Assembly (NCBI GenBank): GCA_002269645.1
Contig: NIVC01000862.1
Coordinates: forward strand, 362,219-426,218
Length of the DNA stretch: 64,000 bases
Origin: Macrostomum lignano
Taxonomy: Eukaryota
Direction of reading: 5' to 3'
Shown here piece by piece: positions 28,244 to 64,000 of the stretch (its first letter is position 1; each line of letters begins with the position of its first letter). The notes beneath the pieces are model-generated. The model had not been told where the DNA came from. It was given only the letters and a program-made list of their open reading frames with translations, and searched no databases. A program made the position numbers and the translations under genes.

Positions 28244-29217
28244 GGCATTCCTTCGGTTTACGATCATTGAAATTAGTGACGATCCCCATTGGAGAGATAG
28301 CCAGATAGGGAAGATACAAAATTGTTGTCTATTTCATCAAAATGCAAAAAAATCAGTAGACAAGCACTCCAATCCTTTTTATTTATCCATCATAACACTA
28401 GCTGCATGTTCAAATGAAAAAAGAAGGTAAAGGGGTTATAGTGATCCATTTCACAGTTCCAAGAATCCAAAGATGATCCTATATATCCACTTCAGTTTAT
28501 GATCATTTAAATGGAAAAGATACATATAAATGATCGTGAACCGAAGCTAGCGTATGTGTGTAAGGGGGTTTTGGTGTTTTACAAGCTCTATTTGAAATTG
28601 ATCACTATCTCAATACATGGCTAGCTTTGGTTCACGATCATTTACATGTATTGCTTACATCTAAATGATCGTAAACTGAAGCTGAGGGGGGGTGGCAGCG
28701 TGCAGAGAATAATAAAGCATCAAGTTAATTGGGAGCGCACATTAACTCAAGATGACATTTCAATCGCCAACAAGCCAACAAATAAATATATGACTACATA
28801 TGTCTTTGACACCCCCCTTAGCTTCGGTTCACGATCATTTAAATGGAAAAAATACATGTAAATGATCGTGACCGAAGCTAGCCATGTATTGAGATAGTGA
28901 TCAATTTCAAATAGAGCTTGTAAAACACCAAAACCCCCTTAACACACATATGCTAGCTTCGGTTCACAATCATTTACATGTATTGCTTCGTTTAAATGAT
29001 CGTAAACCGAAGTGGATATATAGGATCCTTGTCATCGCATGCCATGAAAAAAACCAATTTATCGGCTATCCGTTCAGTTTTTTTAATGTAACGAATAAGC
29101 TCAGTTTAACAATTTTTGTTTATTTCAGCAAGCTATGATCATTTATATGAAAAATTACATGGGGATCGTGAACCAAAATGTGGGTAGAAAAATGATTGTA
29201 AACTGAAGGAATGCCGC
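28244..29217. mobile_element. Foldback/MITE-like element with iterated internal hairpins
   Basis: Ends GGCATTCCTTCGGTTTACGATCATT ... AATGATTGTAAACTGAAGGAATGCC; 28480-28690 is the reverse complement of 28815-29040; repeated GCTTCGGTTCACGATCATTTA/TAAATGATCGTGAACCGAAGC modules. Confidence 0.65.
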
Positions 29218-36289: not shown

Positions 36290-36867
36290 TCACATAAACA
36301 TGCTAGGATCAAATGGATATCTGGGATCCATCGGAGGAAAGAATGGCGATTGCGGTGGCGGCGGCTGCCTAGGCGGTTGCTGCTGCTGTTGTTGTTGATG
36401 ATGCTGAGCGGCTATGGCAGCTGCGTATAACTGCTGCAACTGCGCCACCTCGTGCGGATGCATGTTTTGCAACGGGTGAGGAGGACCTCCGGCTGGGTGC
36501 GACGGTGGCTGCTGCTGCTGCTGCTGCTGCGGATGTGGCGGATGCTGCGGAAGCCTTGGCGGCAGGAAGCTGTGCGGATCAAGGCCGATAGAGGCGCCGC
36601 TGAATACGCTGTGCGGCGGCGGCGGTAACGGAGGCTGCGACATTGATGAAGCGAAGCTGACCTGGTGTTGAGCTTGCAGCATTGCAACCATCTCGGCGGC
36701 CGACACAGGGAGGGTTGGAGGAGGCGGCGGCGGTTGGTGATGCGGCGGAGGCGGCAGGTGATGTTGCTGCGGCGGTCTCATATAGCCGCCGCCGCTAGTC
36801 CGGAACATCTGTTCAACCATGCGAGCACGCTCCAGAGCGGCAATGTGCTGCTGCTGCTGCTGCTGCT

Positions 36868-36911
<44 letters not shown>

Positions 36912-39900: not shown

Positions 39901-40485
39901 AGCTTTAGTAGATGACAGCCTCCGTGTCTCGGGATTGTAAGTGAAAATGTAAAAGAAAGTGTCCGGCTCCAGCTTGAAGTTGGTCACAGCTGAGCGCAAA
40001 TCCGGATAGTGGATCACTGAGCACTTGCCTCGGAGCCAAGCGGTTGGAAAGGCTTCAGACACGTCGCTAATGAACAGCTCTCTAAATTTGATCTCTCGAT
40101 TAGGGAATAGGTCGTCTCGGCAGCCGGTGAAACCTTCGGACTCGCGGTCTCGAAGCGCCTGATAGCTGGCATCCGGGACATCGTGAAGTCTGTAGTAAGT
40201 TCTCACGTGAACATTGGTTGTGTCTCGCCTAGTGATGCGAAACTCTTCGATAATGCTAATCAAATAGGGCTCGTTGCCGCCTCGATTGACATCTTCAATG
40301 TAGCAGCACTCGCCGGCCGTGTACTCAACTCCAGCAACTTTGTAGGTTTCAATTTTATCCTCGGAGCCGCGTTCCAACTTGCCTTTGCCTCGATTGCTCC
40401 TGCGGACATCTTTGCTGCTGGCACTGTTGCTATTAGCAGGCGCTGCCGCTGTCCCTGAAGATGCAGCAGCCTCTTCTGTCTCCAT
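36290..40485 (-). CDS. RERE: RERE/atrophin family corepressor (BAH-ELM2-SANT-GATA-like ZnF-atrophin), ~928 aa
   Basis: Exon 40490-39847 (ATG 40485; BAH ..[30 protein letters not shown], then [13 protein letters not shown]), exon 39167-38916 (ELM2) and exon 38185-36290 ([43 protein letters not shown]; [17 protein letters not shown]; atrophin motif [15 protein letters not shown]; polyQ/polyP). Upstream 5' exon(s) not identified. Confidence 0.92.
38320..38890. repeat. ~42-43-bp minisatellite in a RERE intron
   Basis: AAGATCCCAATTCTCCCTAGCAACACCCGTATCCATCTTCCCC-like units. Confidence 0.9.
39195..39780. repeat. 31-bp purine-rich minisatellite in a RERE intron
   Basis: GGTAGAGGAAGACAGGGGTAGAGGAGCATGA-like units. 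Confidence 0.9.
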
Positions 40486-40708
40486 AAGCACTGCAAGTTT
40501 TTTTGTAGAAGTACAGATTTCTAAACATGGGCAATTTCTACTTATTCCACTGACTCATGAGTAGCTACATACAAGATTGCCAATACTGTACACAGACACA
40601 CTTTCATGGCCATGTACAAAATCAAATCAAATAATTATGGGAGTCACACACATTTGCTGCCAAGCAGGTCGTCTACCTTCTTATTTTTTTCCATGCTAGA
40701 ATAATGTT

Positions 40709-46099: not shown

Positions 46100-47450
46100 T
46101 CACGCGAGGAGGCACCTCATATATCGGCTCCAGTCTCTGTGTCTGCAGTCGATTGGGTTGGTCGTCGTCAGCATTTGACGAACGTTGCAGTCAAAGAAAT
46201 TTGCTAGACTTTGAAATTGTGCTGCTGCGGATTTTGGATGAATTTGGTTCTTCATCAGAAATGGGGACAGTGAGAACTTTTTGGTATTAAGATGCCAGGG
46301 CGCCTCTCTGATCCCCAACACGGCGCTAACAACGGTTTCACCTGGGTCTCGTGCCATCAACAATTCCCAAGCAAGGACCACTAGAATTTTTTAGTGGTCC
46401 TTGCTTGGGAATTGTTGATGGCTCGTCAAGCAGTGGTACGAGTATGCCTGCAAGTGTATAGATCTCTGAATGGATCTTAGCGACAGACTCAACTTTACTG
46501 TACATATAAAGTCACAGCATAGATGCGTTGGAACTCCTCGAGGGCGCGATTGCAGCCCATCTGATCGCCACATATATGCACTTTCTGGTCGGTTTCGAGC
46601 CACAGCGCTCTCGAAGCGGCGTCTCTGGCGAGGTGAGATCTCGGGTTCCGAGTTCCAGATCGCCTTTGGTCGATGCACAGAACGTCTTGGAAGACTAGAA
46701 GCGGCAGACTCGAAGCCAATTGATGAAACGACTCAGCCAAATCATCAGGGCTGAATGCATGGCGCTCAAAACTTTGTGAACGTTGTTTTGGCCTAGTCTT
46801 GGGGTTGCGGAGTCTGCCCACCTAGAGAGAAATCTGAAACATTTCCAGCTGGCAGCGGGGAGTAGTATTCTAGAATGAAGACCAGGTCTGAATTGACCAG
46901 GGCTTGAATGTAGTCGAGGACGTTGCCAATGATTTGATAGGCCCTCAGTTTCAGTAGAATTATCTCGTAAGAGCAATAGTGCGTTGGCTGCATGGTAGGT
47001 GCGTACATGTAGATACGCTCTCATACAGATGATGTGATGCGTCTGTTTGAGAGAGTAAAAGATTAGACGTGCCCAATACTATCACTTGGGTAGGTGACGC
47101 AGCCTTGAGTTGCCAGCCATTTAAAGGTCACCACTCTCGAGTTTGTTTTTACGGTGTCCTTGCAAGGATCGACACCAAACGTAGGCCACAATCCATCAGA
47201 GCTCGTGCAGCCTACAGGAGTGCAGGAATTGAAGCTGCCAAACCAAATCTGTTTGGCCAGCCGCGGTTTGAGTCCTGGACGCCCTCCTTCTCCTTTTTCC
47301 TCGGTAGCTTGCATTTGCACTATTGGGGTGCCGTGCGCGATGGAGAAGCCAGAAGTCGAGGCTCCAGCCGGAGTTCTCGACGGCTGGCAATTCAAACGTC
47401 TCCGATGGCGTTCGGCAACTAGACAGCCATTTAATAGTTGATGCACAAGA
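46100..47450 (-). pseudogene. Degenerate non-LTR retrotransposon (RT) fragment
   Basis: YEIILLKLRAYQIIGNVLDYIQAL resembles the LINE RT motif 'HxxLLxKLxxYGIxGxxLxWI'; WHLNTKK resembles 'WxLxLNxxK'; frames are broken. Confidence 0.3.
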
Positions 47451-48186: not shown

Positions 48187-51100
48187 ATGATTCTTTCTTT
48201 GACCGCCTTGTTACTGATCGTGGTGACCTCGGCGCCATTGGCAGTGATGGCTCAGAGCGTTGGTAAGTTTTCTGAGCCCAATTACCATTGAATATTCTTA
48301 AGCTATTCATGTTACAACATATAGGAAGATCTGGTTTTCCGAAGGGAACACTCTAGATTTAGCATTCAGGCTACTCGGGTCTGTCTGTTTTATTATCAGA
48401 TGTTGAGAGCTTGATTTACCCAAAGCTCCCATCCTGCTTGCGAAATAACAAACAAACGGCATGTAAAGCTAGGAGTAACCATCGCTATGCCTCATCCGGC
48501 AGGTTCCAACCAGCTCGCCAAGCTCAGCCAGTCCCCGGCCGGCCTGGGTCGGTACATGCCGTCAGCCTGGGCGATACCGAAGGCTGCCGCTGCCAACCAG
48601 TTCCAGAACTCGTTGATGTTCACATCAAAAGCGACAGGGCCTTTCATCCAGGGGGCCTATCTGACTGACAAGCTAGTCAGTATCTACTTTCCATTCAACT
48701 ATACGGTGACCGGATTTCTGGTCTACGGCAACATGTCGCGTGCAACGAGTCCGCAGGGCCGAGTGACCAGCTTCAAGGCCGGCTACTCAACTACGAAGTC
48801 CTACTTTACCGCTGGCTCCACTGTGTTCCTTATGAGCGGCATAAGTCCGGTGAGTATTCATTTACTAGGGGCTCGATTTTGCTACTAACACTTCATTGCC
48901 CAACTGTCGGCAGTTTTAATCAAAATATCTAGCTCGTTCCTCGTATTCAATCGAAAAAAAGAAAAAATGAACTCAAGAAAAAAAGTAGGAACAATTGAAA
49001 TTTCACTGCAACTTTGCTTTCTTGCCAGTCTTAAGTACTTGTAATATTTTATAAAGTCAAAAGGCAAAAAGTCTGTGTAGTCACCCCCTAACTGTTTCCT
49101 AGAAAATCTTCTCCGTGACCTACGCGGATGCTAGCACTCCAAGCCTAGTATCATTGAACACCTCCATGGTGACTCAATTGGCGTTCTTTGAAGCGGTCAG
49201 CTGCCAGACGGCTTGCGTACTGCAACTCGATCTGGTCGGCTATCCAAGTCCTACTGGTAAAAATCAAAATTCGAGTTGCTTCTTCTCAGTATTGTTAAAG
49301 TTAGTTTTAATTCCTGCTTTTATTTCATTTAAATGTCTGAATATATCCCACAGCCTGTCCTGACATTGCGACTACCGAGTACACTTCGTTGGTAACTAAA
49401 ACGGCTCAAGAGACTCTGATATCGGTGAACTTCACCCGAGTCTATTATCTAACTAGCTTTGTGCTGCGCGGTCTCTCATCCGACCCCAGCTTTTGGATCT
49501 CTTACCAGAAAATTCACGGTGAACCGTTTGAAAATCTTACTCACGCTTGGAACTCGAGTCTCTACGTCGTAAGGATGCCGATATGCTCTTCCTGAATCAA
49601 AATGTACTTTCGTTTAACTAATTTAGGAAATAGTCAAGACTTTTAACTGACATGCCCCCTATTTGGGAAATCACTAAGATGCCAAGGCTCAGGGAGGGGA
49701 TTGCTCAGATATCAAGGCTCCATCGGGAGTTATTGGTAGGCCAAGAATCAAATAGAGAGTTAGAGTTGAGTTAAGCCATGGCTTAAAGGGAGTTTTTGAT
49801 GTCAAAGCTCAAAAGGGTCGCTGATATCTTAAGCTGAAGAACTGGCTGTTAGGGCGGATGCTTCTTTGCTGAAGACATAATTTTCCTCAAGAAACAAACT
49901 ATAGTGACTTTTACAAGACCAAAATAGCTCGTATAAGCATTTTAATCAAAAAACTATTTCATTCTTTGTTGCCTCCCCAACGGGGCCACAGTTTGTTTAT
50001 TTGATATAACTAGCAGTAAAGTGATCCACTAATAAATACATGTAAGACAAGAACGAATTCCGTTACTTCAACTTCAGTTCCCGGTCACGAACGCTGACGA
50101 ACGCTTTATTGTGCCGTTCATTCTGACGCCTCTGCAGCTGCAGATCCATCTGTCTCCGGCATCCGCTGTAACGGGAGTTGACAGTCTGACAGGCTGCCCT
50201 ATTGAGAGTGAGTTGATGGAAACTCTAAGAAAACGATGCCAATTACGCATTTCAAGTATTGTTGAGAAATAAGTTTACACCTAGTTCTCTCATACCTGCT
50301 ACTTACCTGTATCTAGAATTAAAGCATGCAAAGTAACCAAAGTAATTTCGACTTTTATCACTACATCTTTGGCTCAGATGCGCACCGTTTAACCATTTTG
50401 GCATTCCATAAAAGCTGAGAGAAACCGCAAACTAAGATTTAGGATTGTAAATGAAGTACACATTGTTTCGGTTAAAATTGCTTTGCTAAATAGAAGATTT
50501 TTCTGCCTGACAAATAACAAGCCGCTAGCGTCCAACTTGATTGATGAGCAACGCGTATTTCTCAAAAATAAAAAAAATTCCGTTGCGTGGTTGCAAATTA
50601 ATTGAATTAAAACAAATAAAAGATACACTCAGATCGGCTGCGCGTCGTTTGGACACGGGGAAGGAAAAAGCAATTAATCTTTCTCAGGAGCGATGCCTCA
50701 CCCAACTGTTAGGTATTTCTGCCCACTACCCAGTCCCCACCTATGTTAGAATCTCTATTGGAATTAGATTGGCTTTTTATCACCCCTCATTTTCAACGGC
50801 TGGGCACGCAGCCCACGCATACATGGCTTAATAGAACTACCAATGCCGCTTAACAGGGAGACCAACAGGCAAGGCTGCATGACTGCTCCAGGACTTCATC
50901 TGGAGGTTTTTTAAAACCCGCAGATCAGGCGTTGCTACAGCTATCTTGGCCATATTTTCTACCAATTAATTTATATTTGCTGATAGAGAGGCTTTTCAAT
51001 AGAGACTTAATTTCCTAACTGCTGGGGGATAAGTTGTAAATGCATTTCGGCTTCTGTTGAATGGGCTTCTGTTTTGCCCATGCCATGCCAATAGCAAATG

Positions 51101-54100
51101 CAAGATGAGGATTTGGCCTCTCTTATTGGCCTCTTCTCTTCTAGCTAATCCTATTGAATTACGCCATTAACAATGGTAGCCCCACTCGTAAATCTATGCA
51201 AAATCAAGATACTCTGTTGCATTCGGTGCACGTCTTCTGTGGGTACTTCATAATATAACTATCCGATGTGAGCTAGATCAATTTCATAAATATGTTTCAT
51301 AAACATCCTATTTAAAGAAGATTTTATCAAAGTTACATACTAGAAGCCGCTTAAAATTAGAACTTTCAGCATCGCGACTCACTTTTTTACACATTTCTAT
51401 CTACTGGGGCTAAATGAGACAGATATATATGTATATATATAGTGGAGACCTCCGATGATTCTGCTCTCATTTCCGGTCTAAACTGGCGTCCTGATGAAGC
51501 ACTCTCACTTGCAGACTAAGCTCGATCAAAAACAAATAATATGGGTGAATCTCACCCGATAGTGTCGGAAGATTTTCCTTCGTTAATGATTTTTCTGATG
51601 AATAAGAAGATAAACGAAGTTCATAAGATGACTTAAAGTAATCCATCTATGTACAAAGCAACAATTTTCTTGATTTGTGTGTGTGTTAACGTTGTTTAGC
51701 CTTAAGGACAATCTGTACTTTACCCATATAAAATGACAGTATTATGCCTGCGTTTCAAACCATATTTTAAGGAGTACACGAGAAAGTAAGATTTAATCAC
51801 GGGATTTCATCAGTGGTAAACACGTCTGACTTTTGCATCACAATCAAGGGTTCGTTTCCGTACGCGGTCACATTTAGCTGGAGCATGCGCAAGAGCATTA
51901 GTCGAGGGTATGTCACGCGATTCCCAAGGCACAGGGAGTGTACAGTACATACCTGACGAATAGTCACCTGCTTACTGCAGTTTTTCAATATTATTGTAAG
52001 ATTTTAATGCAACAAAATGACACATAAACACTAAACTAAGAGGCGTTGATGTTGAAACATTGATTGTTCGCTCATCTAGAAATGCTATCTAAGTCCGTTA
52101 CTGTCAACTGTGATCGTCCATCCTCATAAATCACCCGCTACCATCAGCCTGCCCGCCGGGCTGGATGAGTGGCCTGACAGGTTTCTGCTGGCATCGCGAG
52201 GAGTCCGAGGTTTACTGGTCGGAAGCGGACCAGTTCTGTACTGAGGGCTTGGCGTGGGGCGGCAGCCGTGGTAAACTGCTACTGGCCAAGACTGTGGTGG
52301 AGAGGAATATCTTCATGAACGGGTGAGGAATCAGCTATTATTAAACATTTTACATATGAAATCTTCAAGATTTGCTTTTCTGTATACTTAAGGTTTAACC
52401 AAAGACAGGACCTTGCTGGATTGCTTGTCTCGAGTAGCATTTACGAGTATGTTGTTAGTGCTCCTCGGACGCAATAAATGCCTGCCGTATTTGGAATTCC
52501 TCTCTCCTCTCTCTTCTCATATTCTGCCTCATCTTTTCTCTCATTCCGTGTCTCACTTCATCTCTTGTCTCCATCTCCTTTCTCGCCTCTCTTCCTCTCT
52601 CTTTTCTCTCCCCATATCTCTCATCTCCTCTTCCCTCTTTCCTTCTTTTTTCCTCTTTCATCTGGCCCACAGCGCTGAGCTAGATCATCTAGCTCCCACG
52701 TGTACTTGAGGCAAAAATCTGGAGGTTAAAAAAATTGCTAGACGATCAACAATACTTAATAGGCATTAGTCCCTGAGCCATGATTCAGTCTTGCTTAGTA
52801 TGTCTATAAAACTCTATGGGGCTTAGTTAAGCGTTAAGACCCCAAATATACTGTGGTGATCCATATTTCTTAAGATCGTGAGGGCTTCTAGATATTTCCA
52901 TTTTGATTTTTTATTATATTTTCCCATTAAGCAAAAGCAATGCCATGTGCTTCAAAGTTGTACAGAGTCCCTGTCTAATCTACCAATGGCTCCAAATTAC
53001 GTTCCTTTTTGACATTTGAAATTTTATGAATAGTTGTGAAATCTCATTGAAATTCTCAGACACAATTTTTACACTTGTTAGTTAAATGACTAAATGTATG
53101 TTTTCGTAGTTCAATCGAAATCAGTTAACTAAAGCCGCTTAGCATTATCGCGACTTAGCTTCCTGGGTCGAAGATTTTTTAAATTAGTTTTAAAGCGGTT
53201 CGGAACCAACTGTACATTGATTTGAGAAATTCTTTACACTTGGGGCAATTTGAACGAGTCTTTACAATCAATCAATCACCGCATTACCCACAGCGCTGTT
53301 CGGGAGGCCACATACGGCATCTACCACGTCGGGCTTCGACGCAATTCGACAAACAACCAGTGGGTGTGGAGCGACGGCTCGCAGCCGGAGGCGGGCACCT
53401 ATTTCATGACGCAGCCTCCGTTTCACTGCGCCGCTCTGGAAAGTAGCCAAGCTACAATCACCAGCGTTTCGTGCTCTTCGAAGCTGCAATTCATTTGTCA
53501 TGTGGACATGTACTTTGGTAAAAACAAATTTTAAATACTGCTGAATGATAAATATCGCTATCAGTACGTGTCGGAATTTCATTGTTGATTGACTAAATTA
53601 ACTCGCAATGAAGTTGGGTTGTGCGTACATAGTGAAGTCATTCAGTTTTACTGTTTTCCTATTTTGTATAAATGCACATGTAGTTTTAATATCAATCCGT
53701 CAACAGTATATCTTTACATTGCCGCTGTGAGAGTGCGCGAGAATGACATTCACTGTCTTTGCTCTTTCTGTGAGGCTACAGTAAACGTTTGTCACTATAA
53801 CTACTACCTGTCTACCTTATACCTCGAATTCAACTTACGAATCCAACTCGAATCCAGCGTCAAATCTCTAGCTTGAATTTTATACAAAAGGGATTAGTAA
53901 AGCCGTACAACAGGCCGTCTCTTATTACAAACATGTGTATTTTTTGTCAGATCACGTTACCGACACTCACGAAGTACTGTTAACGAAGACTCACAATTGT
54001 GCCTCAGTGTCAGGAGACGAAGTGATTACCATTGCTGGTTACAGCAACATTCTCAGAGTACAAAATATGGACAGCTTTGTCACCGATCAGATTGAAACTC

Positions 54101-57100
54101 AGAATAAGGTTGGAACGGCTTACTCTGTTACCACTTCACCTGGCTGCTGCTACTCCTCGGCTTCAACTGTCTCAACTACGTACTACATGTTCCCTATTAA
54201 GAAGGGTTAGTCCATTGGTTTAAACAATAGAAAAATCTGATTGATTGAGTTCAAATCTCATATCTAATTCATTTAGGCTGTCGAATGCCGCTGTTTGACT
54301 CGCATAACAGTCAAATTGAAGTGAGTTTCGATGCATCGAGCAGCAATTATCGTCGGAATGCAAACTATTCGCTTGCAGGCGCAGCAACTGACTATGCAGG
54401 TCAGTAACTAAATTCGTAATAGCTCGAAGTGTCATATTGTGTTGAGTTCAAGGAAATCATAGCACTAAAAGCAGATTTTTTCCATTAAATCTCCTTACTT
54501 CGAAACAGACCACCTAAAGTGCACAGTTGTCGGCAATGATTACGAATACTATGACTACGGGGTGACAATGACCTACCTGGGCCACGCGTGTAGGCCCTGG
54601 AGTGCCACTTACATTCCGTATAATCGTTCGTGTGTGACAGGTAAATTTTTATATTTTTATTATGTTTATTATTTTATATTTTTGTAGAATTTCCAAAAAC
54701 CAGAATGAAACTGCATCTGAAAATTTATTTTTTTATTTTTTAGTTAGCGTAGGAGCCCCAACAAAGTGCCAGGCTCAGGGTTCAGGAACGGAGTACTATT
54801 GTCAGACAACATTCAATCAGCTGTTGTGTGGTTCGTGAATTATTTTTTCTACTTTTTGAAAGGAAAGTCTTTCTTTAAAAAATTAAATCTTTTTTTACCC
54901 GGCTGATTTTTTAAAACGCATTTCAGCGCGAAACTACCAGCCGATAGCCGACCCTTCCGGAACGTTTCAACTCTCCATCACGTGGCAGAAAGCATTTTAT
55001 TACAACGATGCTCGAGTCGCGAGTCCTGCATTTGCCATGGACACGGTCACCTTGAGCACTGGCTCTTTGCCGGCTACAACTCCCGATCACTACTGGCGAC
55101 TCGTTGCTGACATGAAATCTAGCCATCATATCATTTCGGGTGTCGTTCATTTTTCTCCACGTAAGTGAAATATTTTTTGATTGGTGCGGCATTAATAGGC
55201 AACAGTTAAAGTTCCCTAAACTTTGACCTTTATCACTCGAACCCTCACCAGATACATAGTTTTTTTGTAGCGATATTCTATAGGACTATTGATTCTTTAG
55301 AATGTTTTGGTAAACCTATATTCAGTGCTATGCTCATTAACACGAATTGCTTCTGCTCTGGCAGAAATGAATTTGAAATGCCCCGCCATTTTTCATACTA
55401 CAGCCTAGTGATATTGTGTAATGCAGATTCAAAATTTCAAAGTAATTTTCCAAGGAATAACAGACAAAAGACTATTTATCTTGATTATACTTTTCCCACA
55501 TTCCCTTGATGCTAATAAATAATCTAATCAAAGCTTAACTGCAACCTCCGCTTCAGCATTAAACAACTTCACCGTGCTAGTCAGCAACGAGTGGAACACA
55601 AGCTTAGGCGAACTCGCCCACCAGTCGTGGGCCCTGTGCTACACCTACAACCTGCCCGAAGCGGCTGCATCACCGTTAAAGTTCTGGTGCGAGAGACCCG
55701 TGAGCGGGCGGTACGTCGCCTTCCTGCAAGGGGCAGCAGTTGGAAGACTGTCGATAACTGTGCTGCAACTGTATGGCGAAGAAGGTTAGCTAAGTTCCCC
55801 AAGGAACTTTATGTGCTATCTCCGCATTTATTGTTACATTTAACCCTTTTATTATCTAATAATCGACCATTTTAACCCTTTCGGTCTCGCCGTTATGTTT
55901 CCTTGATTAATAGAAGTCGATTATACTAGCATTGCGATAACAGAAAATCAGCTCAATTTATTTATTTACACTGGCAGTAAACTTTGAAGAGACTGGAACC
56001 TACACGAATCTGATCCGTCGGGTACCAGCTAAGATAATGAGTTCCGCTTCTGTGCTACAAAACAACACACTTTTAATACATGTCCGACTAAGGACATCTG
56101 GATTGAAGCTTTGGCTGACTAATCTATACGAGCACGCGGATATTCTTAACTCGGTAAGTTGATAAAAGGCATTCAATTATGACCTGTTACAGCTAAGTTG
56201 AACTTCTTATGCACTAAATTTAATCAAAGCAAGCCAAACATCTAAGCTGTGCCTTGAATAACGTATAAAATTGTTACATTCAGGCACTCAATTGGCCTTG
56301 GGCTATAGGCCTTAGCTTAAAAATCGATAGCTTCTAAAGACAAGGTTCACAACAATATGAAAAATTATGTTTGGAGAATTGCCTGCATTTAATTTCTTAG
56401 ACAGGGTTAGGAATAGCTACTAATATGAATCTAAATGGAACCATACCTACAATAATGGCTTAATAGTACCTGCATGCAACCATTCTATAACAAACATACT
56501 TGATTCAAGAAGGAAAAATAATATTTTCACTTGTGAGAATTTACAACTTTTTGGCTTCGGCCTATGAAATAAAAATAAAAGTAGAAGACAATATGAAAAT
56601 GAAGCCTCACTATACACAAATATATAAAATGCAACAGAGTAACATGTAGTGCATGCTAAATTAAAGGAATGGTACGTATTCTTTACTGCCCTAGATCAAA
56701 TGCAATCAATCATTCTGTGACGAAAAAATGAATTTTCCCATCTCGGCAGTGCATTTTTCCAAGACATTTGCCCACTAGAAGTTAATGTTATACGATCTTT
56801 GAGTTTCACGTCTTGCTATATTTACAGTGGCTCTTGGATTAAGTAGCACGATAAATGCACATGTTGAATTGCTTACTATAACAAATATTTACCTACAGAC
56901 GGACTTTTTGGCATCATTAGGAGCAAAATAATAAGTAATAATTGATAATTAAGTTTCGTAACATGTTTTACCTGCTTTTTACACTATATATCTATTCTTC
57001 TTTCATTCGGCCCGCAGCCTCGATGGGAGATTTCGATTGGAGGCAACGGATCCGCGGCGTTCATCAGCGAGGCTGTGGTTCGCACCGGCGATGTTTCCAG

Positions 57101-60100
57101 CCGGAGCACCTTGGCGACTATGACTCAGACTAGCGGAGGCGGTCCGGTGGCTGTCAATACAGACAACTACCAGAGTCTGCAGTTGGTCTGGACCCAGCAA
57201 AGCCTTAATATCAGCATTGGCGGGGTCAGATTAGCTGATTTATCGGTGCCAAGTCCAGCGAACGCGTTGGAAATTCGAACAGTGGGCTACACAACCCTTG
57301 GAGACGGTTCCTACGCCACAAAGTCTCAAGTGATGTTCGATATGCCAAGTAAGTTGTTTTATGAAATGCGAAATGCGTTAAAACAAACTGAATCACTCTT
57401 GCATCGTCTGCTATTTTAGACGACAGACAAGTGGGAACGTGGGCACCTATGTACATAATGAATTATCCTTCAGGTTGCTCCACATACTCGTACATGTACA
57501 AGCAGTATATTCAGGTAGGTGCAAACTTCATTTCATCTAGCAAGCTGAAACAATTTACAATTTCATTTTTTTTCATAACAAATTGTTATCTCATATTTCA
57601 GGCAAAATTTTCAAAATCGGTCACAGTATTCGTTTTGGCAACTCAGAGCGGCAGCGACCGGTCGATCCACAACTATCTGCAGTTTCCACAATATTTGACT
57701 TTCCATTACTCTACTGACGGAGTGTCATTTAGTCCGTACATTTTCGTAAGTAATATACATTTTTACCTGATATAAAGTCCAGTGGGTTTGTAGTCTAGTG
57801 GTGAGACCGTCGGACTCACGAATTGAAGGTACGGGGTTCGATTCCCGATCCCACTGGAAACATTTGTGTCCTCGAGCAAGACAATTAACTCTGCATTGCT
57901 TCAGTTCACCCAGCTGTAAAATGGGTGCCAGCATTAGCTGGGGTAATTGAGGATGTGTGTGGCGACCCCCAGTCCTTGGACTGAACAGCCGTACGCAGCC
58001 TTCAGATACGCCGCGCAATAGCTGCGGCTGAGCTGTCGGTTGCATATCTGGCCCAATTGGGGAAGGTGTAATCAGTTATTATTATCATTAATAATACTAT
58101 TATTTTTTGTTCCTTATTATTATTATTATTAATATTAAGGTCTAAAGACACTAGAAAAATTAGCCGTTAGTGTTATTTTTCACACATTTTGGAACTGTTT
58201 GTTTCCAAATCTATAATGAAGCAGGAATTGAAATAATCCTCTATATTTATTAAAACAAAACACAAATATTTTTTAAATACTTACGCGTTTAGGAAGACCT
58301 TGTCAGCTCAAGAAAGCCGTTTCATGCTCGAGACTCTTACGTGTCACTGATTGGTCTGTACCCGGAGCTCAGTGGTCGGATGTTCCGCATGTATGCCGTG
58401 TCTTTTTATGGCCGCTGGGAGTCGCGATGGATGCTGTACGGATGTCTGTCTAGTAAGTACACCTGGTTTTGCTTCTAGCTAGTAAAATTATTATTTGTCC
58501 TTATAGCTAATTATAGCTAATTTCTAATTTAAACATTACCTTAAAAAACTCCAGGATGATATAACAAACTATTAAAGTTTCTGTAGATTTGCAGTATAAT
58601 GTAGTAAACACGATATAGCTAGCATGTTGTTTAATCAAAATGGCTTCTGGCAAATCAGAGCATCACTAGATCAGTCATGCCCATTTGACTGACACCTGAG
58701 CACTCACATGCACAGGGTACACTACGGCCCTGATGTTCTATTTACTAGGCATCTGCACACAGTGTGCCTTGAGTAGTCGAGTTTAATGAAAAAAAATCCC
58801 GTGACAGAGCAAAACTAATTTGGCCGTCCGCGGAAACTGAGTCTAACAATAGAAGCTTTCTTTGCCGCTCAAAATTGGTGTTGAACTTTAAATCCTGTCA
58901 ATTTGATTTTCAGATCGAACCGCCTACAATCCACCGCCGGTGCTCATGTCCCAAAATCTGCCTCTATACACCAGCGACCCCACCTATGCAAAATACCTGA
59001 CCGATGGCAAACGCACGCCGAAAAATGGCGAGCCCAACTGGATTGCCAACAGTCCACAGCCGTGGATAGCCGTGGACTTCTTAGCGCCCAGGTACATTGA
59101 GTTCGCCCTGGTGATCGGTTACAACGTGAATCATGGCAGTGAGTATTTAACGATTTCATTTCATCAATAAATTAAATTAACTTGAAGCGAATTACCGTCG
59201 AAACACTAATTTAACTGAACCTGTTTTTAGATTTGGCATCAAACGAGAAAAATGTTTATTTAGCAACATTTGTTACAAACCAGACTGTTTATTCGGAAAC
59301 CGATTCTGTCTTTGTTGCACAAAATTACTATGCCGTACTTAAGCAGCCGTGGCGCGTTAAAGTCAACAAGGTAATTATATTTTTGTGGTACCTATTGTAC
59401 TTTTAATTTCTGAATTGTAGTGAACTTTTACAAACTGTATGACAGCTGCTAGCAAGCTCCTATAGATGTACTATTCGGGTGCTAATTCAGTTCGAAATCA
59501 TAAACATGTAATCAGGACGTCTGTTTCAATGCCAGATGCCAAAGTTGGACCAAAATTGGACCAGTTGACATAAGATTATCCTACATATTTTCACTGGGAC
59601 CTAGTCAGAATTCTATGGGATCTTAGAAGATTTTACACAATTTGATCACCCTTGGGATACGTTTTCACTCGCTTTATTTCGTAAATCATAAACTGTTAAA
59701 AATATCTAAAAAGAAGTTACTATTTAGTTAGAAGTTAGAACTCTTCTCTGTTGAGGAATTTTTTTAATCGTTCTAATTTTTATTATTTTTGTTTCTGCAA
59801 GAATTTTCGCGCAATCAAATCTCAGGTCGCTAGGCTGATTGGCCTCGCTAAGACCAACACCAGTCTTTGTTCGCCGTTCTGTCCGCTGCAAATTATCGAG
59901 CTGGAGGTGTACGGCAACCCGCTTAGTAAGCACATTGAGCATGCTTTCCTGTTACTAAGCTTATTTGATCGATCAACCCGTGGTCTTTTAATTCCAACGC
60001 TTTAGGTAGTGCCTAATGGTAATGTTGGTAGATAATGTACATCAAATTTAGTGCTGGTGCTACAATATACCCTAACTGAATCAGGAGCGTCGACGTGGAT

Positions 60101-62715
60101 TTTGTATGGTGGGGGGGGGGCAAAGCCAAGAATTTTACATGACTAGATTTCTGCATTATTTTGTGAATCGGTGTTACTAGCACTCAATTTGGCGCCGCTG
60201 GCACTCATTTTGGCATCTGTCCCCTGGTGGCAATGCGCCTGAACTGAATCGCGAGTCGAAATACGTTGAACAAAAATCACTGGCTCATCGGATTACACAT
60301 TGCAGTGTATATATTTTAGCTCTAATGAAATCTTTATCCAATATGAAGACCTTATGAAACTTTCTTGCCGCGTTGAGAAAATAGAAAAACCCAGTTAAAT
60401 CTAAAAAGATGTCAGAAGTGTAGCACGACATCAGGAGCGGGTTCGTATCCTTTACCGCTGGAATGATAGGATTTTTGATGTGATTTTAAACGTTTTTTGT
60501 AATTCCTTAATAATCTTTCAGACGTCACAGACTCGAACATACCTCGGGCTTACGACGTGTCAGTCGGATTCGGTACTCGCTTCCCATCGACCGGAGTGCG
60601 TCACGAGGACATCAGCAGCATTTGCGACTACTGCGCCGACATGTACTCATTGCCCTTGGACTTCCCCGGCGACGAGAGCTTCCACCAAGCTCTGATGTTT
60701 CCCATTAGCAGCCAGTTTTTCATCTACCTGCCGCAAACCTACTCATTGACTGGCTTAATGATCCGGGGGACCTACAAAAGACTGGATAATGTGCACGGCA
60801 TGGTGACCAGCTTTCAGGTGTGGTATTCGCTTGACAGGAACAGCAACGGCTTGGTGCCCTTCACCAATATTCAGGACGGCTCGGTGGTAAGCCCTGGCAG
60901 ACGGTCTTAGTATCATGATCAATCAATGGATCTCCTTGTCTAGGGGCCAGACCAAATTTACTGCTGCCGTATGGGAATTCTCTTTATGCTGGCTTAACTA
61001 TCAAATTGGCTGATAAAATCAATATTACACAAAGCATTGTAATTATACTTTTACCCAGACGCAATAACAAAACATCTTGGCCATTATTCCACAGTTTTGA
61101 TGTGTACCATAGACATTTGGATTGAAAAAATCCATCGCTCAGTATTTTTGTTAATAAATACAGAAAAACAAGAAGTAAATGAACAAAAAGAAAAATCATT
61201 AAAACTAAAGTACCAGCTACACGAAAAGAGTTCATAATTAATGTCATAGCTAGTGCAGTTTATTAGTTTGTAGTCGAAATTTGACAATGTAAAAATCAAT
61301 TTGTCAAACAAAGTGAAACATGCAGTTCTCAAAGCCGCAGTTTCCAAAGATGCTCGACACTTTAGCCTGATGATTTGGCACTGCAAAAGGAGTTGGTCTA
61401 TGTTGAATGTTTTCTATGAAAGAGAAATACAGGTGCTCAAGTATAGTTGCTGAACTATCCATTTGAAGGATGCACGTCTTGGTTAAGTTGGCTTGCGACT
61501 GATGAGCTTCGTCTGATGAGCTTCTTTGGTACCGCAGTATCCAAGCTGGGATTCTTTGGGACTGTCGGCTGCTCGACTGAATCGATTGGCCGCTTTGAGG
61601 CATCGCTTATAGCCGTCGAGGCGTTGAAGACTGCATGGTCGCGTTTTCTTCCTAGGTAGCGCCGCACGGTTCGTTCAGTCGTCGACAGGAAGATTTTTCC
61701 AATTAATACGCGCGGCTGTTTGACGAGGTGCACTATAGCCATAGTTGTTTGACAAGACAAATAGCTTTTTCTCGCACTACTCGCTTTCCTGATTTCTTGC
61801 AAGACGCAAGCCAAATTAGCACTCATCAGTGTTGTCTATGATCAAACTAATCCACACAACTCAGTCGTTTGTGGGTAAAACAACTCTTAAAAAACAGCCA
61901 ATTGAAGCATGATAAAAAGTGTGGAATAATGGCCGCAAAGTGTGGAATAATGGATAAATAATCAGCGGTTGCAGTGCGTGACAACGATTGTCTGGCGAGC
62001 GCCGGTAGGCGCGAGCCATAGACAAATTGTTGTCACGCACTGGGACCGCTGATTCTTTGCATTGTTTTTCTGTTTGACGATCCTACAGACAATGCATTGT
62101 TTGTAGTAATGGGCTTTTCTGCATTAAAAATGTGAATAATGATCGTCAAATTGCTAAACAATGACTGAGCGCTGACTGAAAGTATAAATATTGTACAATA
62201 CACTTGTATGGTATGCAACTTCGTTGAATAATGGCCATAGACACTCCAGTTTTAACCATTATTCAACTCAGTTGCATAATATACAATCTACCATTGTCAA
62301 TCTCTCAAACCACATACGCAACTATACATTGTCCATGGCGGTACTTTAGGTCTATGGTAAAAATCGACATTAATAGGCAAAATGACGATAAGCGTCATAT
62401 ACCAACAGAAATCAAACGTATCTATTTTGTAGTCTTGAATATAGAGCTCCACTTTAAAATCAATTTTTAGTATTTTTTTCGTTTGTTGCAATGATATTTT
62501 TATTTAGAATTTGGTTAAAATATTTTGAATTATTTAATCATGCCCTTTAAAAAAATTTGTGCAGGTCACGTTCTCCGGCCCACCAGTCTACGATGCCACT
62601 GCTCGCGCGAACTTTCAACGATCAATTCTAGCCACTCTGGTCCAAATCAAGCTGACAGCCTACTGCAATAGGCAACAGTTGAAGATGGATTTAGTTGGCT
62701 ACCCGAACGAGCCGT
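48187..62715 (+). CDS. Large secreted multidomain lectin-like mosaic protein (5' part; continues beyond window)
   Basis: 22 phase-compatible exons: 48187-48262 (signal peptide MILSLTALLLIVVTSAPLAVMAQ), 48473-48849, 49103-49256, 49354-49568, 50078-50207, 52148-52322, 53294-53517, 53951-54205, 54509-54640, 54744-54830, 54927-55160, 55557-55784, 55978-56153, 57018-57348, 57420-57514, 57602-57745, 58293-58452, 58914-59138, 59231-59370, 59802-59925, 60522-60886, 62565-62715. No stop codon reached. Confidence 0.85.
52148..53517 (+). CDS. C-type lectin domain (2 exons) of the mosaic protein
   Basis: CPPGW..FCW..VYWSEADQFC...GKL / YHVGLRR..QWVWSDGS...HCAAL...SVSCSSKLQFICH. Confidence 0.85.
54509..54830 (+). 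CDS. Divergent kringle-like domain (2 exons)
   Basis: CTVVGNDYEYYDYGVTMTYLGHACRPW...KCQ..EYYCQT..QLLC follows the kringle C-x-GNG-x-Y-x-G...T-x-x-G-x-x-C-x-x-W pattern. Confidence 0.6.
54927..55784 (+). CDS. F-type lectin (FTP/fucolectin)-like domain (2 exons)
   Basis: PAFAMD...PDHYWRLV.. / LNNFTVLVSN..LC..KFWCERPVSGRYV..LSITVLQLYG. Confidence 0.7.
55978..57348 (+). CDS. Farnesoic acid O-methyltransferase (Methyltransf_FA)-like domain (2 exons)
   Basis: IHVRLRTSGLKLWLTN.. / PRWEISIGGNGSAAFI...YQSLQLVW..NISIG..IRTVGYTT resembles the FAMeT 'yEIxIGGwxNxxSxI...FWIxW' signature. Confidence 0.55.
57778..58135 (+). mobile_element. tRNA-derived SINE with CORE-like central domain
   Basis: tRNA-like head 57778-57858 (A box TAGTCTAGTGG, B box GGTTCGATTCCC, TCCAGTGGG/CCCACTGGA pairing); TGTGTCCTCGAGCAAGACAATTAACTCT..CTTCAGTT..CTGTAAAATGGG resembles the MIR CORE; (TAT)n-like tail. 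Confidence 0.75.
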
Positions 62716-62979
62716 GTAAGTAGAAGCTGATTTTGAATCTGATGTTGAATACTCACATTACGTCGGTTCAAACAGATGTTGGAAATTCAATTTTTGAAAG
62801 TCTATGCAGATCTAAAGATCTAGCTCCTTTGCTACAAGTAGGTGCCAAAAAACCGGAAAATAATTCATTAATTCTGCAGTTCCACGCTCTATAATCAAAT
62901 GAGTTCTATTTCAGAGAGCCTTCAAACAATTTCAGTAGTTTATAAGTGTTTCGTCATTGTACAGGTAGTAACCAAGGGG

Positions 62980-63125
62980 CAGTGTTGGGCTTTCCGATTA
63001 AGTAACTTCCGGTTCCTAGGAAAGTAGCTTCCGACACTTGTTCCGGTACCGGTAATTTTTAAACAAAGTAACTTCCGGTACTTTCGTTACAGGTCCTTTC
63101 TAATTTTAAAGAACCGCCAGTTAAA
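62980..63125 (+). mobile_element. Possible left end of a hAT-like element
   Basis: Begins CAGTGTTGGG, followed by repeated AGTAACTTCCGG subterminal motifs; no matching right end in the window. Confidence 0.35.
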
Positions 63126-64000
63126 GTTCTTAAACATGTCTTTATGAAAAAACAAAAATATGTGTTGGTCTAGAGTTGAATATGCTGTTATGCCTCAAAA
63201 AAGATGCTACATACGAGCGTAATACTTTTTTATTATCGCATCCAAACTTTGAGTTTTGGAGGCCGATTTTCAAATGTTGATTCTGACTCTTCAGAAGTAC
63301 TGTATGTATGAAGATTATTTTTGTCCAGTTGGTGTGTCACAATGAGTAGAATACATGTACTTTAGAATAATTTTTGTCTGTGTGGATCATTCTCATCGCC
63401 CTACTAGTATTTTGCTGTAATTTTACAGCAGCTATACTTTTACAGTAGTGTAAGTATACTTTTTTTACCGCTGACTCACTTAGAATCAATGATAATCTTC
63501 TGGCAGCCTTAGAAATACCAGTTAACAATTAATAAAAAAGATACCAGGACAACAAATGGATAGTATTTGATAGATGGACCAATGCACAAGACTTTAAATA
63601 CCTTGATTAGTGCCATGCGCTAGCTGCAATTAATTAGCCTAAAAAGTTGAAAGTCAAAAAACACTTTTAGAATAATGCATCAATCGTGTCGTCCTGCACG
63701 AACATCTAAATAAAGAAATCGGCCTTCAAAAACTTTTCCAAAACTTGCAAGAAGTTGTTAAAGGATGTTTATTGTTTTGAAAGTGTCTTGTTTCAGAATT
63801 AATGGTTACCAATAATTACTTTAATTCTATGATTTCATGATGCTTAAAACGTGCTTTAACTTCAAAAATTAAAAACCACAACAACTAGGATCATCCCCTT
63901 TTTACCTTTTTATAATTGTACTACGAGTATTTTGGTGAAAGTTTTGCGCTTTTGGGAAATATTTAGTGCTAACTTGGCTGTTTGGCACCTAAAATCATTT

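What the first reader, a model, noticed from the sequence alone, without database searches (positions are those of the whole stretch)
48187..62715. Giant secreted mosaic protein with an unusual lectin/kringle/FAMeT domain string
Seen: signal peptide, then discoidin/F5-8C-like x2, C-type lectin, an unassigned ~85-aa exon, kringle-like, F-type-lectin-like, FAMeT-like, F5-8C-like (..VLATQSG..YSTDG..RMY..LYGC), F-type/F5-8C-like (PWIAVDF..IELEVYG) and F5-8C-like. That is more than 1,300 aa in 22 exons and the frame is still open at the window end. Established: each module is a glycan-, lipid- or protein-binding extracellular fold. I do not recognise this combination as a named protein. The domains are highly diverged, and canonical sugar-binding motifs (EPN/QPD; the F-lectin HxRxD..R motif) are not evident. 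Inference: a lineage-specific multi-ligand pattern-recognition, mucus/adhesion or gamete-recognition protein family.
Basis: partly seen in the sequence, partly recalled or inferred. Interest (0 to 1): 0.72.

Follow-up and report, generated by a model that had tools for sequence, protein, structure and literature searches.

The report
Giant secreted mosaic protein gene, flatworm

Summary
48187-62715 (+) carries 22 GT-AG exons with consistent phases, giving an uninterrupted 1389-aa reading frame that starts with a signal peptide and ends at a phase-1 donor. Exon GC is 0.52 and intron GC 0.37. Every module boundary is a phase-1 intron.

The only relatives found among 1.84 billion representative proteins are fragmentary Macrostomum lignano (flatworm) models. 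One of them starts exactly at the exon-21 boundary and is 71% identical to the last module. It then continues with a second copy of modules 2-6. So the window holds one about 1190-aa nine-module super-repeat plus the start of a second, and the gene almost certainly runs past the window end.

Module names:
- **C-type lectin-like:** solid, and it lacks the calcium/sugar motif.
- **Modules 1, 10 and 8:** discoidin (F5/8C), supported.
- **Module 2:** marginal.
- **Kringle-like:** six conserved Cys and a shortened loop, weakly to moderately supported.
- **'F-type lectin', 'FAMeT' and module 9:** no Pfam or PDB support.
- **The 85-aa exon:** still unassigned.

It is not the known flatworm adhesives Mlig-ap1 or Mlig-ap2. 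The best reading is a lineage-restricted, multivalent extracellular binding or cross-linking protein. Its function is inferred, not shown.

The parts
48187..48262 (+). Exon 1: start codon and signal peptide (aa 1-25)
   Evidence: ATG with A at -3. The hydrophobic core is followed by VMA|QS. Donor is GCGTTG|gtaagt.
48503..48849 (+). Exon 2: discoidin module D1, N-terminal two thirds (aa 26-141)
   Evidence: Paralogous to exon 21. The D1-type profile hits only discoidin domains in PDB.
49103..49256 (+). Exon 3: D1 C-terminal part (aa 142-192), ends ..LDLVGYPSPT
   Evidence: Paralogous to exon 22. A phase-1 intron follows.
49354..49568 (+). Exon 4: module D2, first part (aa 193-264)
   Evidence: Colinear with M. 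lignano P0004 and P0002. Cys is present at both domain ends. The discoidin HMM score is marginal, 6.5 bits with 1/200 shuffles reaching it.
50078..50207 (+). Exon 5: module D2, second part (aa 265-307)
   Evidence: Same evidence as exon 4. Phase-1 boundary.
52148..52322 (+). Exon 6: C-type lectin-like domain, N-half (aa 308-365)
   Evidence: Pfam Lectin_C 39 bits, E 1.4e-9. PDB hits are ovocleidin-17, NK receptors and snaclecs.
53294..53517 (+). Exon 7: C-type lectin-like domain, C-half (aa 366-440); QPP instead of EPN/QPD, no WND
   Evidence: the motif was read from the sequence.
53951..54205 (+). Exon 8: unassigned 85-aa module U (aa 441-525), a single 1-1 exon
   Evidence: No Pfam or PDB hit. 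The single-sequence AF2 model is all-beta but has pLDDT 53, and there is no Foldseek match. The P0004 counterpart is about 55 aa longer and poorly alignable.
54509..54640 (+). Exon 9: kringle-like module, N-half (aa 526-569)
   Evidence: The best PDB hits are HGF, plasminogen and angiostatin kringles.
54744..54830 (+). Exon 10: kringle-like module, C-half (aa 570-598); strong acceptor, weak donor GTTCGT
   Evidence: It restores Cys 4-6, which align one-to-one with the six Cys of the P0004 kringle-like module.
54927..55160 (+). Exon 11: module F, first half (aa 599-676)
   Evidence: Colinear at 28% identity with P0004 611-766. No Pfam or PDB assignment.
55557..55784 (+). Exon 12: module F, second half (aa 677-752), ends ..LQLYGEE; TAG at 55787 if unspliced
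   Evidence: P0004 ends at the equivalent point.
55978..56153 (+).
   Evidence: This is the only exon that restores phase between exons 12 and 14. Donor is TCG|GTAAGT. No family hit.
57018..57348 (+). Exon 14: module FA core (aa 812-921)
   Evidence: The single-sequence AF2 model is all-beta with pLDDT 53. The top Foldseek hits are galectin/GH16 jelly-rolls, but at E>=0.1.
57420..57514 (+). Exon 15: discoidin module D8, start (aa 922-953)
   Evidence: Strong acceptor, in phase.
57602..57745 (+). Exon 16: D8 middle (aa 954-1001; ..VLATQSG..YSTDG..)
   Evidence: Pfam F5_F8_type_C gives 18.2 bits, below the cut-off. The mixed discoidin HMM gives 9.6 bits, with 0/200 shuffles reaching it.
58293..58452 (+). 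Exon 17: D8 end (aa 1002-1054; ..RMY..LYGC)
   Evidence: The terminal Cys pair is 941/1052.
58914..59138 (+). Exon 18: module D9, first part (aa 1055-1129; ..PWIAVDF..)
   Evidence: Strong splice sites. No family assignment.
59231..59370 (+). Exon 19: module D9, middle (aa 1130-1176)
   Evidence: Aligned to the P0002 N-terminus (tblastn 59242-59385, E 4e-4).
59802..59925 (+). Exon 20: module D9, end (aa 1177-1217; ..IELEVYGNPL)
   Evidence: P0002 runs D9 -> D10-type without a break.
60522..60886 (+). Exon 21: discoidin module D10, the first module of the second super-repeat (aa 1218-1339)
   Evidence: 71% identical to M. lignano P0004, which starts exactly at this exon boundary.
62565..62715 (+). 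Exon 22: D10 end (aa 1340-1389; ..DLVGYPNEP), phase-1 donor CCGT|GTAAGT; the gene continues beyond the window
   Evidence: Both P0004 and P0002 continue with a D2-type module after this point.

Best explanation
The region is the 5' part (22 exons, 1389 codons) of one intact gene of a macrostomid flatworm. It encodes a secreted, very large modular extracellular protein.

After the signal peptide comes a nine-module super-repeat of about 1190 aa:
1. discoidin D1
2. D2
3. a non-canonical C-type lectin-like domain
4. an 85-aa unassigned module
5. a six-cysteine shortened kringle-like module
6. module F
7. module FA
8. discoidin D8
9. module D9

The tenth module in the window (D10) opens a second copy of the unit, which continues past the window end. 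The protein is therefore probably about 2000-2400 aa or more.

Shown: the gene structure, the signal peptide, the super-repeat, and the identity of the CTLD, three discoidin modules and (weakly) the kringle-like module.

Inferred: the protein works outside the cell as a multivalent binder or cross-linker. Many weak protein, glycan or membrane-binding beta-sandwich modules strung together would tie components of a secretion or matrix (mucus, adhesive/cohesive material, egg or body covering) to each other or to a surface, in the way multi-discoidin proteins do in other marine invertebrates. The CTLD lacks the calcium/sugar triad and the kringle lacks the long loop, so classical lectin or lysine binding is not expected from them.
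For: Gene model:
- 22 exons, all GT-AG, with consistent phases and no stop.
- Exon/intron GC is 0.517/0.369 and GC3 is 0.61.
- All ten module boundaries fall on phase-1 introns, the classic exon-shuffling pattern.
- The only hydrophobic segment is the N-terminal signal peptide.

Homologues:
- An exhaustive HMMER scan of 1.84e9 representatives with the exon-2/exon-21 profile gave two real hits. Both are Macrostomum lignano UniRef entries.
- P0004 starts at the exon-21 boundary. It is 71% identical over 171 aa without gaps, then colinear at 24-28% with window aa 84-752. That is a second copy of D2-CTLD-U-K-F.
- P0002 joins D9-D10-D2.

Modules:
- Lectin_C scores 39 bits.
- The D1-type profile hits lactadherin C2, neuropilin b1/b2 and factor V/VIII C domains, E from 2.4e-4; 29 of the 32 listed hits are discoidin-domain proteins and the three others have E>=0.34.
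- D8 gets a sub-threshold Pfam F5/8C hit, and 0/200 shuffles reach its score against a mixed discoidin HMM.
- The kringle profile hits angiostatin, plasminogen and HGF, E from 1.5e-4, and six Cys are conserved between the two copies.

Analogy: sea-urchin nectin has a signal peptide plus six discoidin domains and is an adhesive/cohesive protein. Discoidin and CTL domains recur in temporary-adhesion proteins (PMC10057474). Large M. lignano genes are known to be split into unconnected transcripts in the annotation (PMC6410801).
Against: - There are no expression data and no functional data.
- Four junctions (SP-D1, F-FA, FA-D8, D8-D9) are supported only by splice-site quality and phase, not by a homologue or transcript.
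- Retained introns after exons 12 and 22 would end the frame at once, and the M. lignano model P0004 ends just there.
- Four or five of the modules have no verified fold, so 'binding modules' is an extrapolation.
- The C-terminus is unknown, so a membrane anchor cannot be excluded.
- The domain set does not match the characterised flatworm adhesives Mlig-ap1 and Mlig-ap2.
Confidence: 0.55

Rival explanations
1. It is a humoral pattern-recognition or opsonin-type immune protein. The lectin-like and discoidin modules would bind microbial surfaces and aggregate them.
For: It is secreted and has many lectin-type folds. The paralogous units have diverged quickly, 24-28% identity between super-repeats. 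The distribution is lineage-restricted.
Against: The CTLD lacks the EPN/QPD and WND sugar-binding residues (sequence). No F-lectin motif or family hit was found. No effector or collagen/oligomerisation module was seen. There are no induction data.
Confidence: 0.15
2. It is a reproductive protein, in seminal fluid, the egg coat or sperm-egg interaction, evolving quickly under sexual selection in a hermaphroditic flatworm.
For: It is lineage-restricted and divergent. The multi-lectin-type architecture recalls gamete-recognition proteins; this rests on general knowledge and was not tested here.
Against: There are no tissue data. 71% identity to the M. lignano counterpart over 171 aa without gaps is not especially fast evolution. 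Nothing in the sequence is specific to reproduction.
Confidence: 0.15
3. The exons belong to two or three neighbouring genes, for example SP-D1..F, FA-D8-D9 and D10 onward, rather than one.
For: An in-frame stop follows immediately if the introns after exon 12 or exon 22 are retained. The M. lignano model P0004 begins at the exon-21 equivalent and ends at the exon-12 equivalent.
Against: P0004 has no start Met and begins exactly on an exon boundary, so it is a fragment. P0002 bridges D9 to D10 to D2. Exons 13 and 21 have no upstream ATG plus signal peptide and would start in the middle of or without a secretion signal. All junctions are phase-compatible with good splice sites. No AATAAA lies between 55790 and 55977. 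M. lignano annotation is known to fragment giant genes.
Confidence: 0.1
4. It is a decaying or unexpressed duplicate (pseudogene) that merely retains open frames.
For: No transcript evidence is available here. One weak donor exists (exon 10, GTTCGT).
Against: 1389 codons across 22 exons carry no stop or frameshift. There is a strong exon/intron GC contrast and GC3 bias. Cysteines and core motifs are conserved against M. lignano.
Confidence: 0.05

Closest known systems
Macrostomum lignano uncharacterised proteins UniRef100_A0A1I8G7X9 / A0A1I8GUP4 ('C-type lectin / F5/8 type C domain-containing') and A0A1I8J0E9 / A0A1I8FVK6
   Same: They belong to the same family. They are 71% identical to window aa 1219-1389 and share an exon boundary with it. 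They have the same module order: D1-type, D2, CTLD, U, kringle-like, F, and also D9, D1-type, D2.
   Different: They are fragments of 324-766 aa without a start codon and carry only automatic names. They correspond to the second super-repeat, which lies mostly beyond this window. Nothing is known about their function.
Sea-urchin nectin (six tandem discoidin domains; adhesive/cohesive protein of tube feet)
   Same: It has a signal peptide followed by repeated F5/8C discoidin modules, in a secreted protein of a marine invertebrate that binds matrix or cells multivalently (PMC10057474).
   Different: Nectin is 984 aa and made only of discoidin domains that are 47-55% identical to each other. Here the discoidin modules are about 25% identical and are interleaved with a CTLD, a kringle-like module and four unassigned modules.
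Flatworm temporary-adhesion proteins Mlig-ap1 / Mlig-ap2 (M. lignano)
   Same: They come from the same genus-level lineage and are giant secreted repetitive proteins. [quoted passage not shown] They were also fragmented into several transcripts in the annotation (PMC6410801).
   Different: Their defining parts are absent from the 1389 aa seen here: vWD/C8/TIL, EGF arrays, TSP-1, LDLa, KR-rich or 221/255-aa repeats. Discoidin and kringle modules are not reported for them.
Vertebrate discoidin-domain proteins (lactadherin/MFG-E8 C2, neuropilin b1/b2, factor V/VIII C domains)
   Same: They are the best structural relatives of modules D1 and D10. The alignment covers the conserved beta-core up to the C-terminal ..EL.G motif.
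   Different: The scores of 17-24 bits are below Pfam's gathering score. D1 lacks the N-/C-terminal disulfide. The ligand-binding 'spike' loops cannot be compared.
Kringle domains (plasminogen/angiostatin, HGF); Tmed-krg1 of the flatworm Theama
   Same: There are six cysteines, and P0004 has the spacings C-x22-C, C-x10-C, C-x10-C and C-x4-C. The motif is Y.G....T..G..C. The top PDB hits are kringles.
   Different: The C2-C3 loop is 13-15 residues instead of about 27. The Pfam Kringle model does not match. Only the N-terminal ~25 residues align to solved kringles. It is a single copy per super-repeat, not an array as in Tmed-krg1 (PMC9229212).

Membership tests
C-type lectin-like domain (Pfam PF00059) | Match to the family profile above its curated cut-off | tested here: met
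   39.0 bits against a cut-off of 22.6, E 1.4e-9, covering profile positions 4-106 of 107. PDB relatives reach down to E 7e-6.
C-type lectin-like domain (Pfam PF00059) | Conserved cysteine framework (4-6 Cys) | tested here: met
   There are six Cys, at aa 309, 321, 338, 411, 426 and 434.
Calcium-dependent carbohydrate-binding C-type lectins (subset of CTLDs) | EPN or QPD tripeptide plus the WND motif of Ca2+ site 2 | tested here: not met
   The sequence reads ..FMTQPPFHC.. and ..TITSVSC... The M. lignano copy has GQPG. The nearest solved relatives are non-sugar-binding CTLDs such as ovocleidin-17, NK receptors and snaclecs.
F5/8 type C (discoidin) domain, modules D1 and D10 | Match to Pfam PF00754 above the gathering score | tested here: not met
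   D10 scores 17.4 bits and P0001 19.0 bits against a cut-off of 28.2. D1 gives no hit.
F5/8 type C (discoidin) domain, modules D1 and D10 | Specific, consistent similarity to solved discoidin domains over the beta-core | tested here: met
   A four-sequence profile found 29 of 32 PDB hits to be discoidin-domain proteins: lactadherin C2 at E 2.4e-4, plus neuropilin-2 b1/b2 and factor V/VIII. The alignment covers profile positions 43-167.
F5/8 type C (discoidin) domain, module D8 | Profile match and a terminal disulfide pair | tested here: inconclusive
   Pfam gives 18.2 bits, E 0.0028, below the cut-off. The mixed discoidin HMM gives 9.6 bits, exceeded by 0 of 200 shuffles. Cys941 and Cys1052 lie at the domain ends.
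F5/8 type C (discoidin) domain, module D2 | Profile match | tested here: inconclusive
   No Pfam or PDB hit. The mixed discoidin HMM gives 6.5 bits, reached by 1/200 shuffles, but the M. lignano D2 copy shows no signal. Cys194/Cys304 lie at the ends. The module is only 115 aa.
Kringle (Pfam PF00051) | Match to the family profile | tested here: not met
   There is no Pfam hit for the window module or for P0004.
Kringle (Pfam PF00051) | Six cysteines in kringle spacing and similarity to solved kringles | tested here: inconclusive
   Six Cys are conserved in both copies, but the C2-C3 loop is 13-15 residues instead of about 27. The PDB profile's top hits are angiostatin at E 1.5e-4, plasminogen and HGF, but they align only over about 25 N-terminal residues.
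F-type lectin (fucolectin / FTP domain), module F | Profile or structure-sequence match; HxRxD...R fucose-binding motif | tested here: not met
   The clean module has no Pfam hit. A two-sequence profile against PDB found nothing. The discoidin HMM gave no signal. There was only a sub-threshold hit to PF22633 in a crude ORF concatenation, E 0.019. The motif is not present by inspection.
Farnesoic acid O-methyltransferase N-terminal domain (Pfam PF12248, 'FAMeT'), module FA | Match to the family profile | tested here: not met
   No Pfam hit at E<=10 with two different boundaries. No PDB sequence hit. The AF2 single-exon model has low confidence (pLDDT 53), and its top Foldseek hits, galectin/GH16 jelly-rolls, are non-significant at E>=0.1. 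The resemblance (..WEISIGG....LQLVW..ISIGG..) is a pattern seen by eye only.
Flatworm adhesion proteins Mlig-ap1 / Mlig-ap2 | vWD-C8-TIL, EGF array, TSP-1/LDLa, KR-rich or 221/255-aa repeats | tested here: not met
   None of these domains was found by Pfam in the 1389 aa or in P0004/P0002. The architectures are as described in PMC6410801.

The most novel reading that the evidence does not exclude
The about 1190-aa nine-module super-repeat is an invention of macrostomid flatworms. Several of its modules (U, F, FA, D9, perhaps D2) would be domain families with no detectable relatives elsewhere, possibly including a new fold. The protein would be a major structural component of a flatworm-specific secretion, such as rhabdite/mucus or adhesive-organ material, distinct from the known Mlig-ap1/ap2 system.
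Probability: 0.2. Interest if true: 0.6.

Novelty: new variant of a known kind. Interest (0 to 1): 0.42.

Why it matters
If the model is right, this is a previously undescribed family of giant secreted proteins, so far seen only in Macrostomum, a laboratory model for regeneration, bioadhesion and sexual selection in which RNAi and in situ screens are routine.

The tandem nine-module unit, bounded throughout by phase-1 introns, is a clean example of exon shuffling followed by whole-unit duplication. It also shows that the current M. lignano protein set holds only broken pieces of the gene under misleading automatic names such as 'Omp85 domain-containing'.

Four to five modules escape all sequence-based classification and are good targets for structure prediction. 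Against this, lineage-specific mosaics of lectin-type modules are common in invertebrate genomes and no function is known, so the finding is useful rather than surprising.

Tried and rejected
1. **Word-indexed protein search.** A crude ORF concatenation, the clean 1360-aa model and a three-sequence D10 profile containing P0004's own N-terminus all returned nothing. The last query included a sequence known to be in the collection.
2. **Spliced sequences in restricted tools.** I did not try to get round this. Only single-exon translations were used.
3. **Single-sequence AlphaFold2.** Exon 14 (FA core) and exon 8 (U) both gave pLDDT 53. Foldseek against PDB gave nothing below E 0.1.
4. **Profile or sequence searches of PDB.** Modules F, D2, FA and D9 gave no hit.
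5. **hhalign of all module types against each other.** There was no significant pair, so the unassigned modules cannot be tied to the discoidin modules that way. By blastp, only D1-D10 are related.
6. **Automatic exon chaining with a low intron penalty.** This inserted many short in-phase spurious exons, which were removed after inspection. One of them, 54744-54830, was reinstated because its cysteines align with the homologue.
7. **Exact look-up of two window ORFs in assemblies, to identify the organism.** They are not on record.
8. **Literature search.** A search for the UniProt accessions found nothing, and a search for Macrostomum with discoidin, kringle or lectin found only adhesion papers on other proteins.
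9. **Other scans.** There are no Rfam families or tRNAs in the window, and no DNA repeat is shared between the gene and the rest of the window.
Full report
**What is in the sequence.** The window is eukaryotic. It has AT-rich non-coding DNA full of mini- and microsatellites, and short GC-richer exons.

On the + strand between 48187 and 62715 I rebuilt the gene from stop-free segments, splice-site scores and phase bookkeeping. I then corrected the model by eye at three places:
- exon 13 (55978-56153), the only exon that restores the phase between exons 12 and 14;
- the longer acceptor of exon 15;
- exon 10 (54744-54830), added after comparison with a homologue.

The final model has 22 exons, all GT-AG with good consensus. 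It spans 4168 nt and 1389 codons with no stop, starts at ATG 48187 and ends at a phase-1 donor (CCGT|GTAAGT) at 62715. Exon GC is 0.517 against 0.369 in introns, and GC3 is 0.61. The N-terminus is a textbook signal peptide and is the only hydrophobic stretch.

**Module boundaries.** All ten boundaries between modules fall on phase-1 introns, whereas introns inside modules have mixed phases. This is the classic signature of exon-shuffled extracellular modules. It independently supports the division into these parts:

| Module | Residues |
|---|---|
| SP | 1-25 |
| D1 | 26-192 |
| D2 | 193-307 |
| CTLD | 308-440 |
| U | 441-525 |
| K | 526-598 |
| F | 599-752 |
| FA | 753-921 |
| D8 | 922-1054 |
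| D9 | 1055-1217 |
| D10 | 1218-1389 |

**Relatives.** The word-indexed protein search returned nothing three times. One of those queries contained a sequence that is demonstrably in the collection, so those negatives mean little.

The exhaustive HMMER scan accepts only contiguous window translations. I gave it the alignment of the two paralogous exons 21 and 2. Among 1.84 billion representatives it found two real hits. Both are Macrostomum lignano UniRef entries (lineage Platyhelminthes, Macrostomorpha).
- **P0004 (766 aa)** begins with VTDSNIP..., exactly at the exon-21 boundary. It is 71% identical to window aa 1219-1389 over 171 residues without a gap. It then continues colinearly, at 24-28% identity, with window aa 84-752, that is D2, CTLD, U, kringle-like and F.
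- **P0002 (324 aa)** runs from the end of a D9-type module through a D10-type module into a D2-type module.

So D10 is not a tenth kind of module. It is the D1-type opener of a second super-repeat, and the unit D1-D2-CTLD-U-K-F-FA-D8-D9 (about 1190 aa) is tandemly duplicated. No D2'-type exon lies in 62716-64000, so the gene continues beyond the window. The window is very probably from Macrostomum or a close relative: either an orthologue in a congener or a paralogue in M. lignano. I could not decide which.

**One gene or several?** If the introns after exon 12 or exon 22 were retained, a stop would follow at once. P0004 ends at the exon-12-equivalent position. Against a split:
- P0004 has no start codon and begins on an exon boundary, so it is a fragment.
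- P0002 bridges D9-D10-D2.
- Exons 13 and 21 are not preceded by an ATG plus signal peptide.
- There is no AATAAA between 55790 and 55977.
- The M. lignano annotation is documented to break giant genes into unconnected transcripts (PMC6410801).

I put the several-genes reading at about 0.1.

**Which module names hold up.**
- **CTLD:** firm. Pfam gives 39 bits, and the PDB relatives are ovocleidin-17, NK receptors and snaclecs. It has QPP in place of EPN/QPD and no WND, so calcium-dependent sugar binding is not expected.
- **D1/D10:** Pfam is below cut-off (17-19 bits). A four-sequence profile hits discoidin domains for 29 of its 32 PDB matches at E<=10; the three exceptions are weak (E>=0.34). 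The best is lactadherin C2 at E 2.4e-4, followed by neuropilin-2 b1/b2 and factor V/VIII C, aligned across the beta-core. I accept these as discoidin.
- **D8:** Pfam F5/8C gives 18 bits. A mixed discoidin HMM gives 9.6 bits, with 0/200 shuffles reaching it, and there is a terminal Cys pair. Probably discoidin.
- **D2:** marginal. It scores 6.5 bits with 1/200 shuffles reaching it, but the M. lignano copy shows nothing. It has a terminal Cys pair but is only 115 aa, and the profile finds nothing in PDB.
- **K:** six Cys align one-to-one between the two copies. P0004 has the spacing C-x22-C-x15-C-x10-C-x10-C-x4-C, close to a kringle except for a C2-C3 loop about half the usual length. The top PDB hits are angiostatin, plasminogen and HGF (E 1.5e-4 for the best), but only about 25 residues align. 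Pfam Kringle does not match. 'Kringle-like, shortened' is fair.
- **F ('F-type lectin'), FA ('FAMeT') and D9:** there is no Pfam hit, no PDB hit with sequence or profile, and no signal against the discoidin HMM or against each other. The only trace is a sub-threshold PF22633 hit in a crude concatenation.
- **Single-exon structure predictions:** AF2 models of the FA core and of U are all-beta but of low confidence (pLDDT 53). Foldseek finds nothing significant. The FA core's top, non-significant hits are galectin/GH16 jelly-rolls.

The F, FA and D9 labels are therefore resemblances by eye, not findings.

**What it most likely does.**
- *Shown:* it is secreted, it is very large, it is built from repeated beta-rich extracellular modules, and it lacks the canonical lectin sites.
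- *Inferred:* it is a multivalent extracellular binder or cross-linker in a secretion or matrix. The analogy is with multi-discoidin proteins such as sea-urchin nectin and with the recurrent use of discoidin and CTL modules in invertebrate adhesive secretions (PMC10057474).

It is not Mlig-ap1 or Mlig-ap2, whose defining vWD/TIL/EGF/TSP-1/KR-repeat parts are absent. It is also not the six-kringle Tmed-krg1 type. Immune recognition and a reproductive role are live alternatives, and nothing here discriminates among the three.

**Novelty and score.** The building blocks that can be named are ordinary. The family exists in UniProt only as unnamed or misnamed fragments from one species. The nine-module super-repeat and its four to five unclassifiable modules are new as an architecture. 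I rate it a new variant of a known kind, with interest about 0.4. It is a sound gene-model correction and a reasonable target in a tractable model flatworm, but not a surprise to a specialist without functional or structural data.

**Limits.**
- Spliced sequences could not be submitted to the exhaustive HMMER search or to structure prediction, so modules split across exons could not be folded.
- Lineage restriction was tested exhaustively only for the D1-type exon profile.
- The 3' part of the gene lies outside the window.
- The U region of the homologue is about 55 aa longer than in the window, so a small exon may be missing there.

Noticed in passing
window 25082-29600 and 29785-34298, gap 29610-29784: Two direct copies of 4.5 kb, 99.3% identical, lie on either side of a run of 175 N. 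This is either an assembly duplication at a gap or a very recent tandem duplication. Each copy carries an ORF (25208-25891 / 30008-30469) with no Pfam match.
   Followed up: partly
window 36290-40491, minus strand: A neighbouring gene has a BAH-domain exon (39805-40491, Pfam 53 bits) and a 649-aa Gln/Ala/Pro-rich exon (36290-38239). By eye the second exon holds SANT-like and GATA-finger-like motifs, giving an MTA/RERE-like look. The intron between them is filled with 31-bp and 43/86-bp minisatellites at 38315-39756.
   Followed up: partly
window 19921-22786, minus strand: There is a bZIP transcription-factor exon (21749-22786, bZIP_1 34 bits). A downstream ORF (19921-20691) has a hydrophobic stretch, which looks CREB3/ATF6-like by eye. 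The two ORFs are separated by a 23-bp minisatellite array at 20794-21658, and a 34-bp array (19228-20020) overlaps the low-coordinate end of the 19921-20691 ORF.
   Followed up: partly
window 1-20000: An unusually dense chain of tandem arrays occupies this stretch: a 13-mer CCCTCTCTCCTCA x121 (9-1594, GC skew -0.89), a 19-mer x60, GATA x312 (3517-4766), a 20-mer x49, a 39/77-mer x40 (9438-11002), and 35-, 23- and 34-mers. Most long 'ORFs' listed there are translations of these repeats.
   Followed up: no
Tool behaviour: The word-indexed protein search did not return the M. lignano UniRef proteins, even when one of them was part of the query alignment. The cluster look-up shows they are in the collection. 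Its negative results for UniRef-only eukaryotic entries should not be read as absence.
   Followed up: partly
M. lignano proteins P0002/P0005 (UniRef100_A0A1I8J0E9, A0A1I8FVK6): These fragments of the same family carry the automatic name 'Omp85 domain-containing protein', which nothing in their sequence supports. Pfam finds no family in P0002.
   Followed up: partly
window 57770-58070 (intron 16) and 47063-47446: These stretches have open frames on both strands and look by eye like short interspersed-element remnants. ARAGORN finds no tRNA, and there is no second copy in the window.
   Followed up: partly
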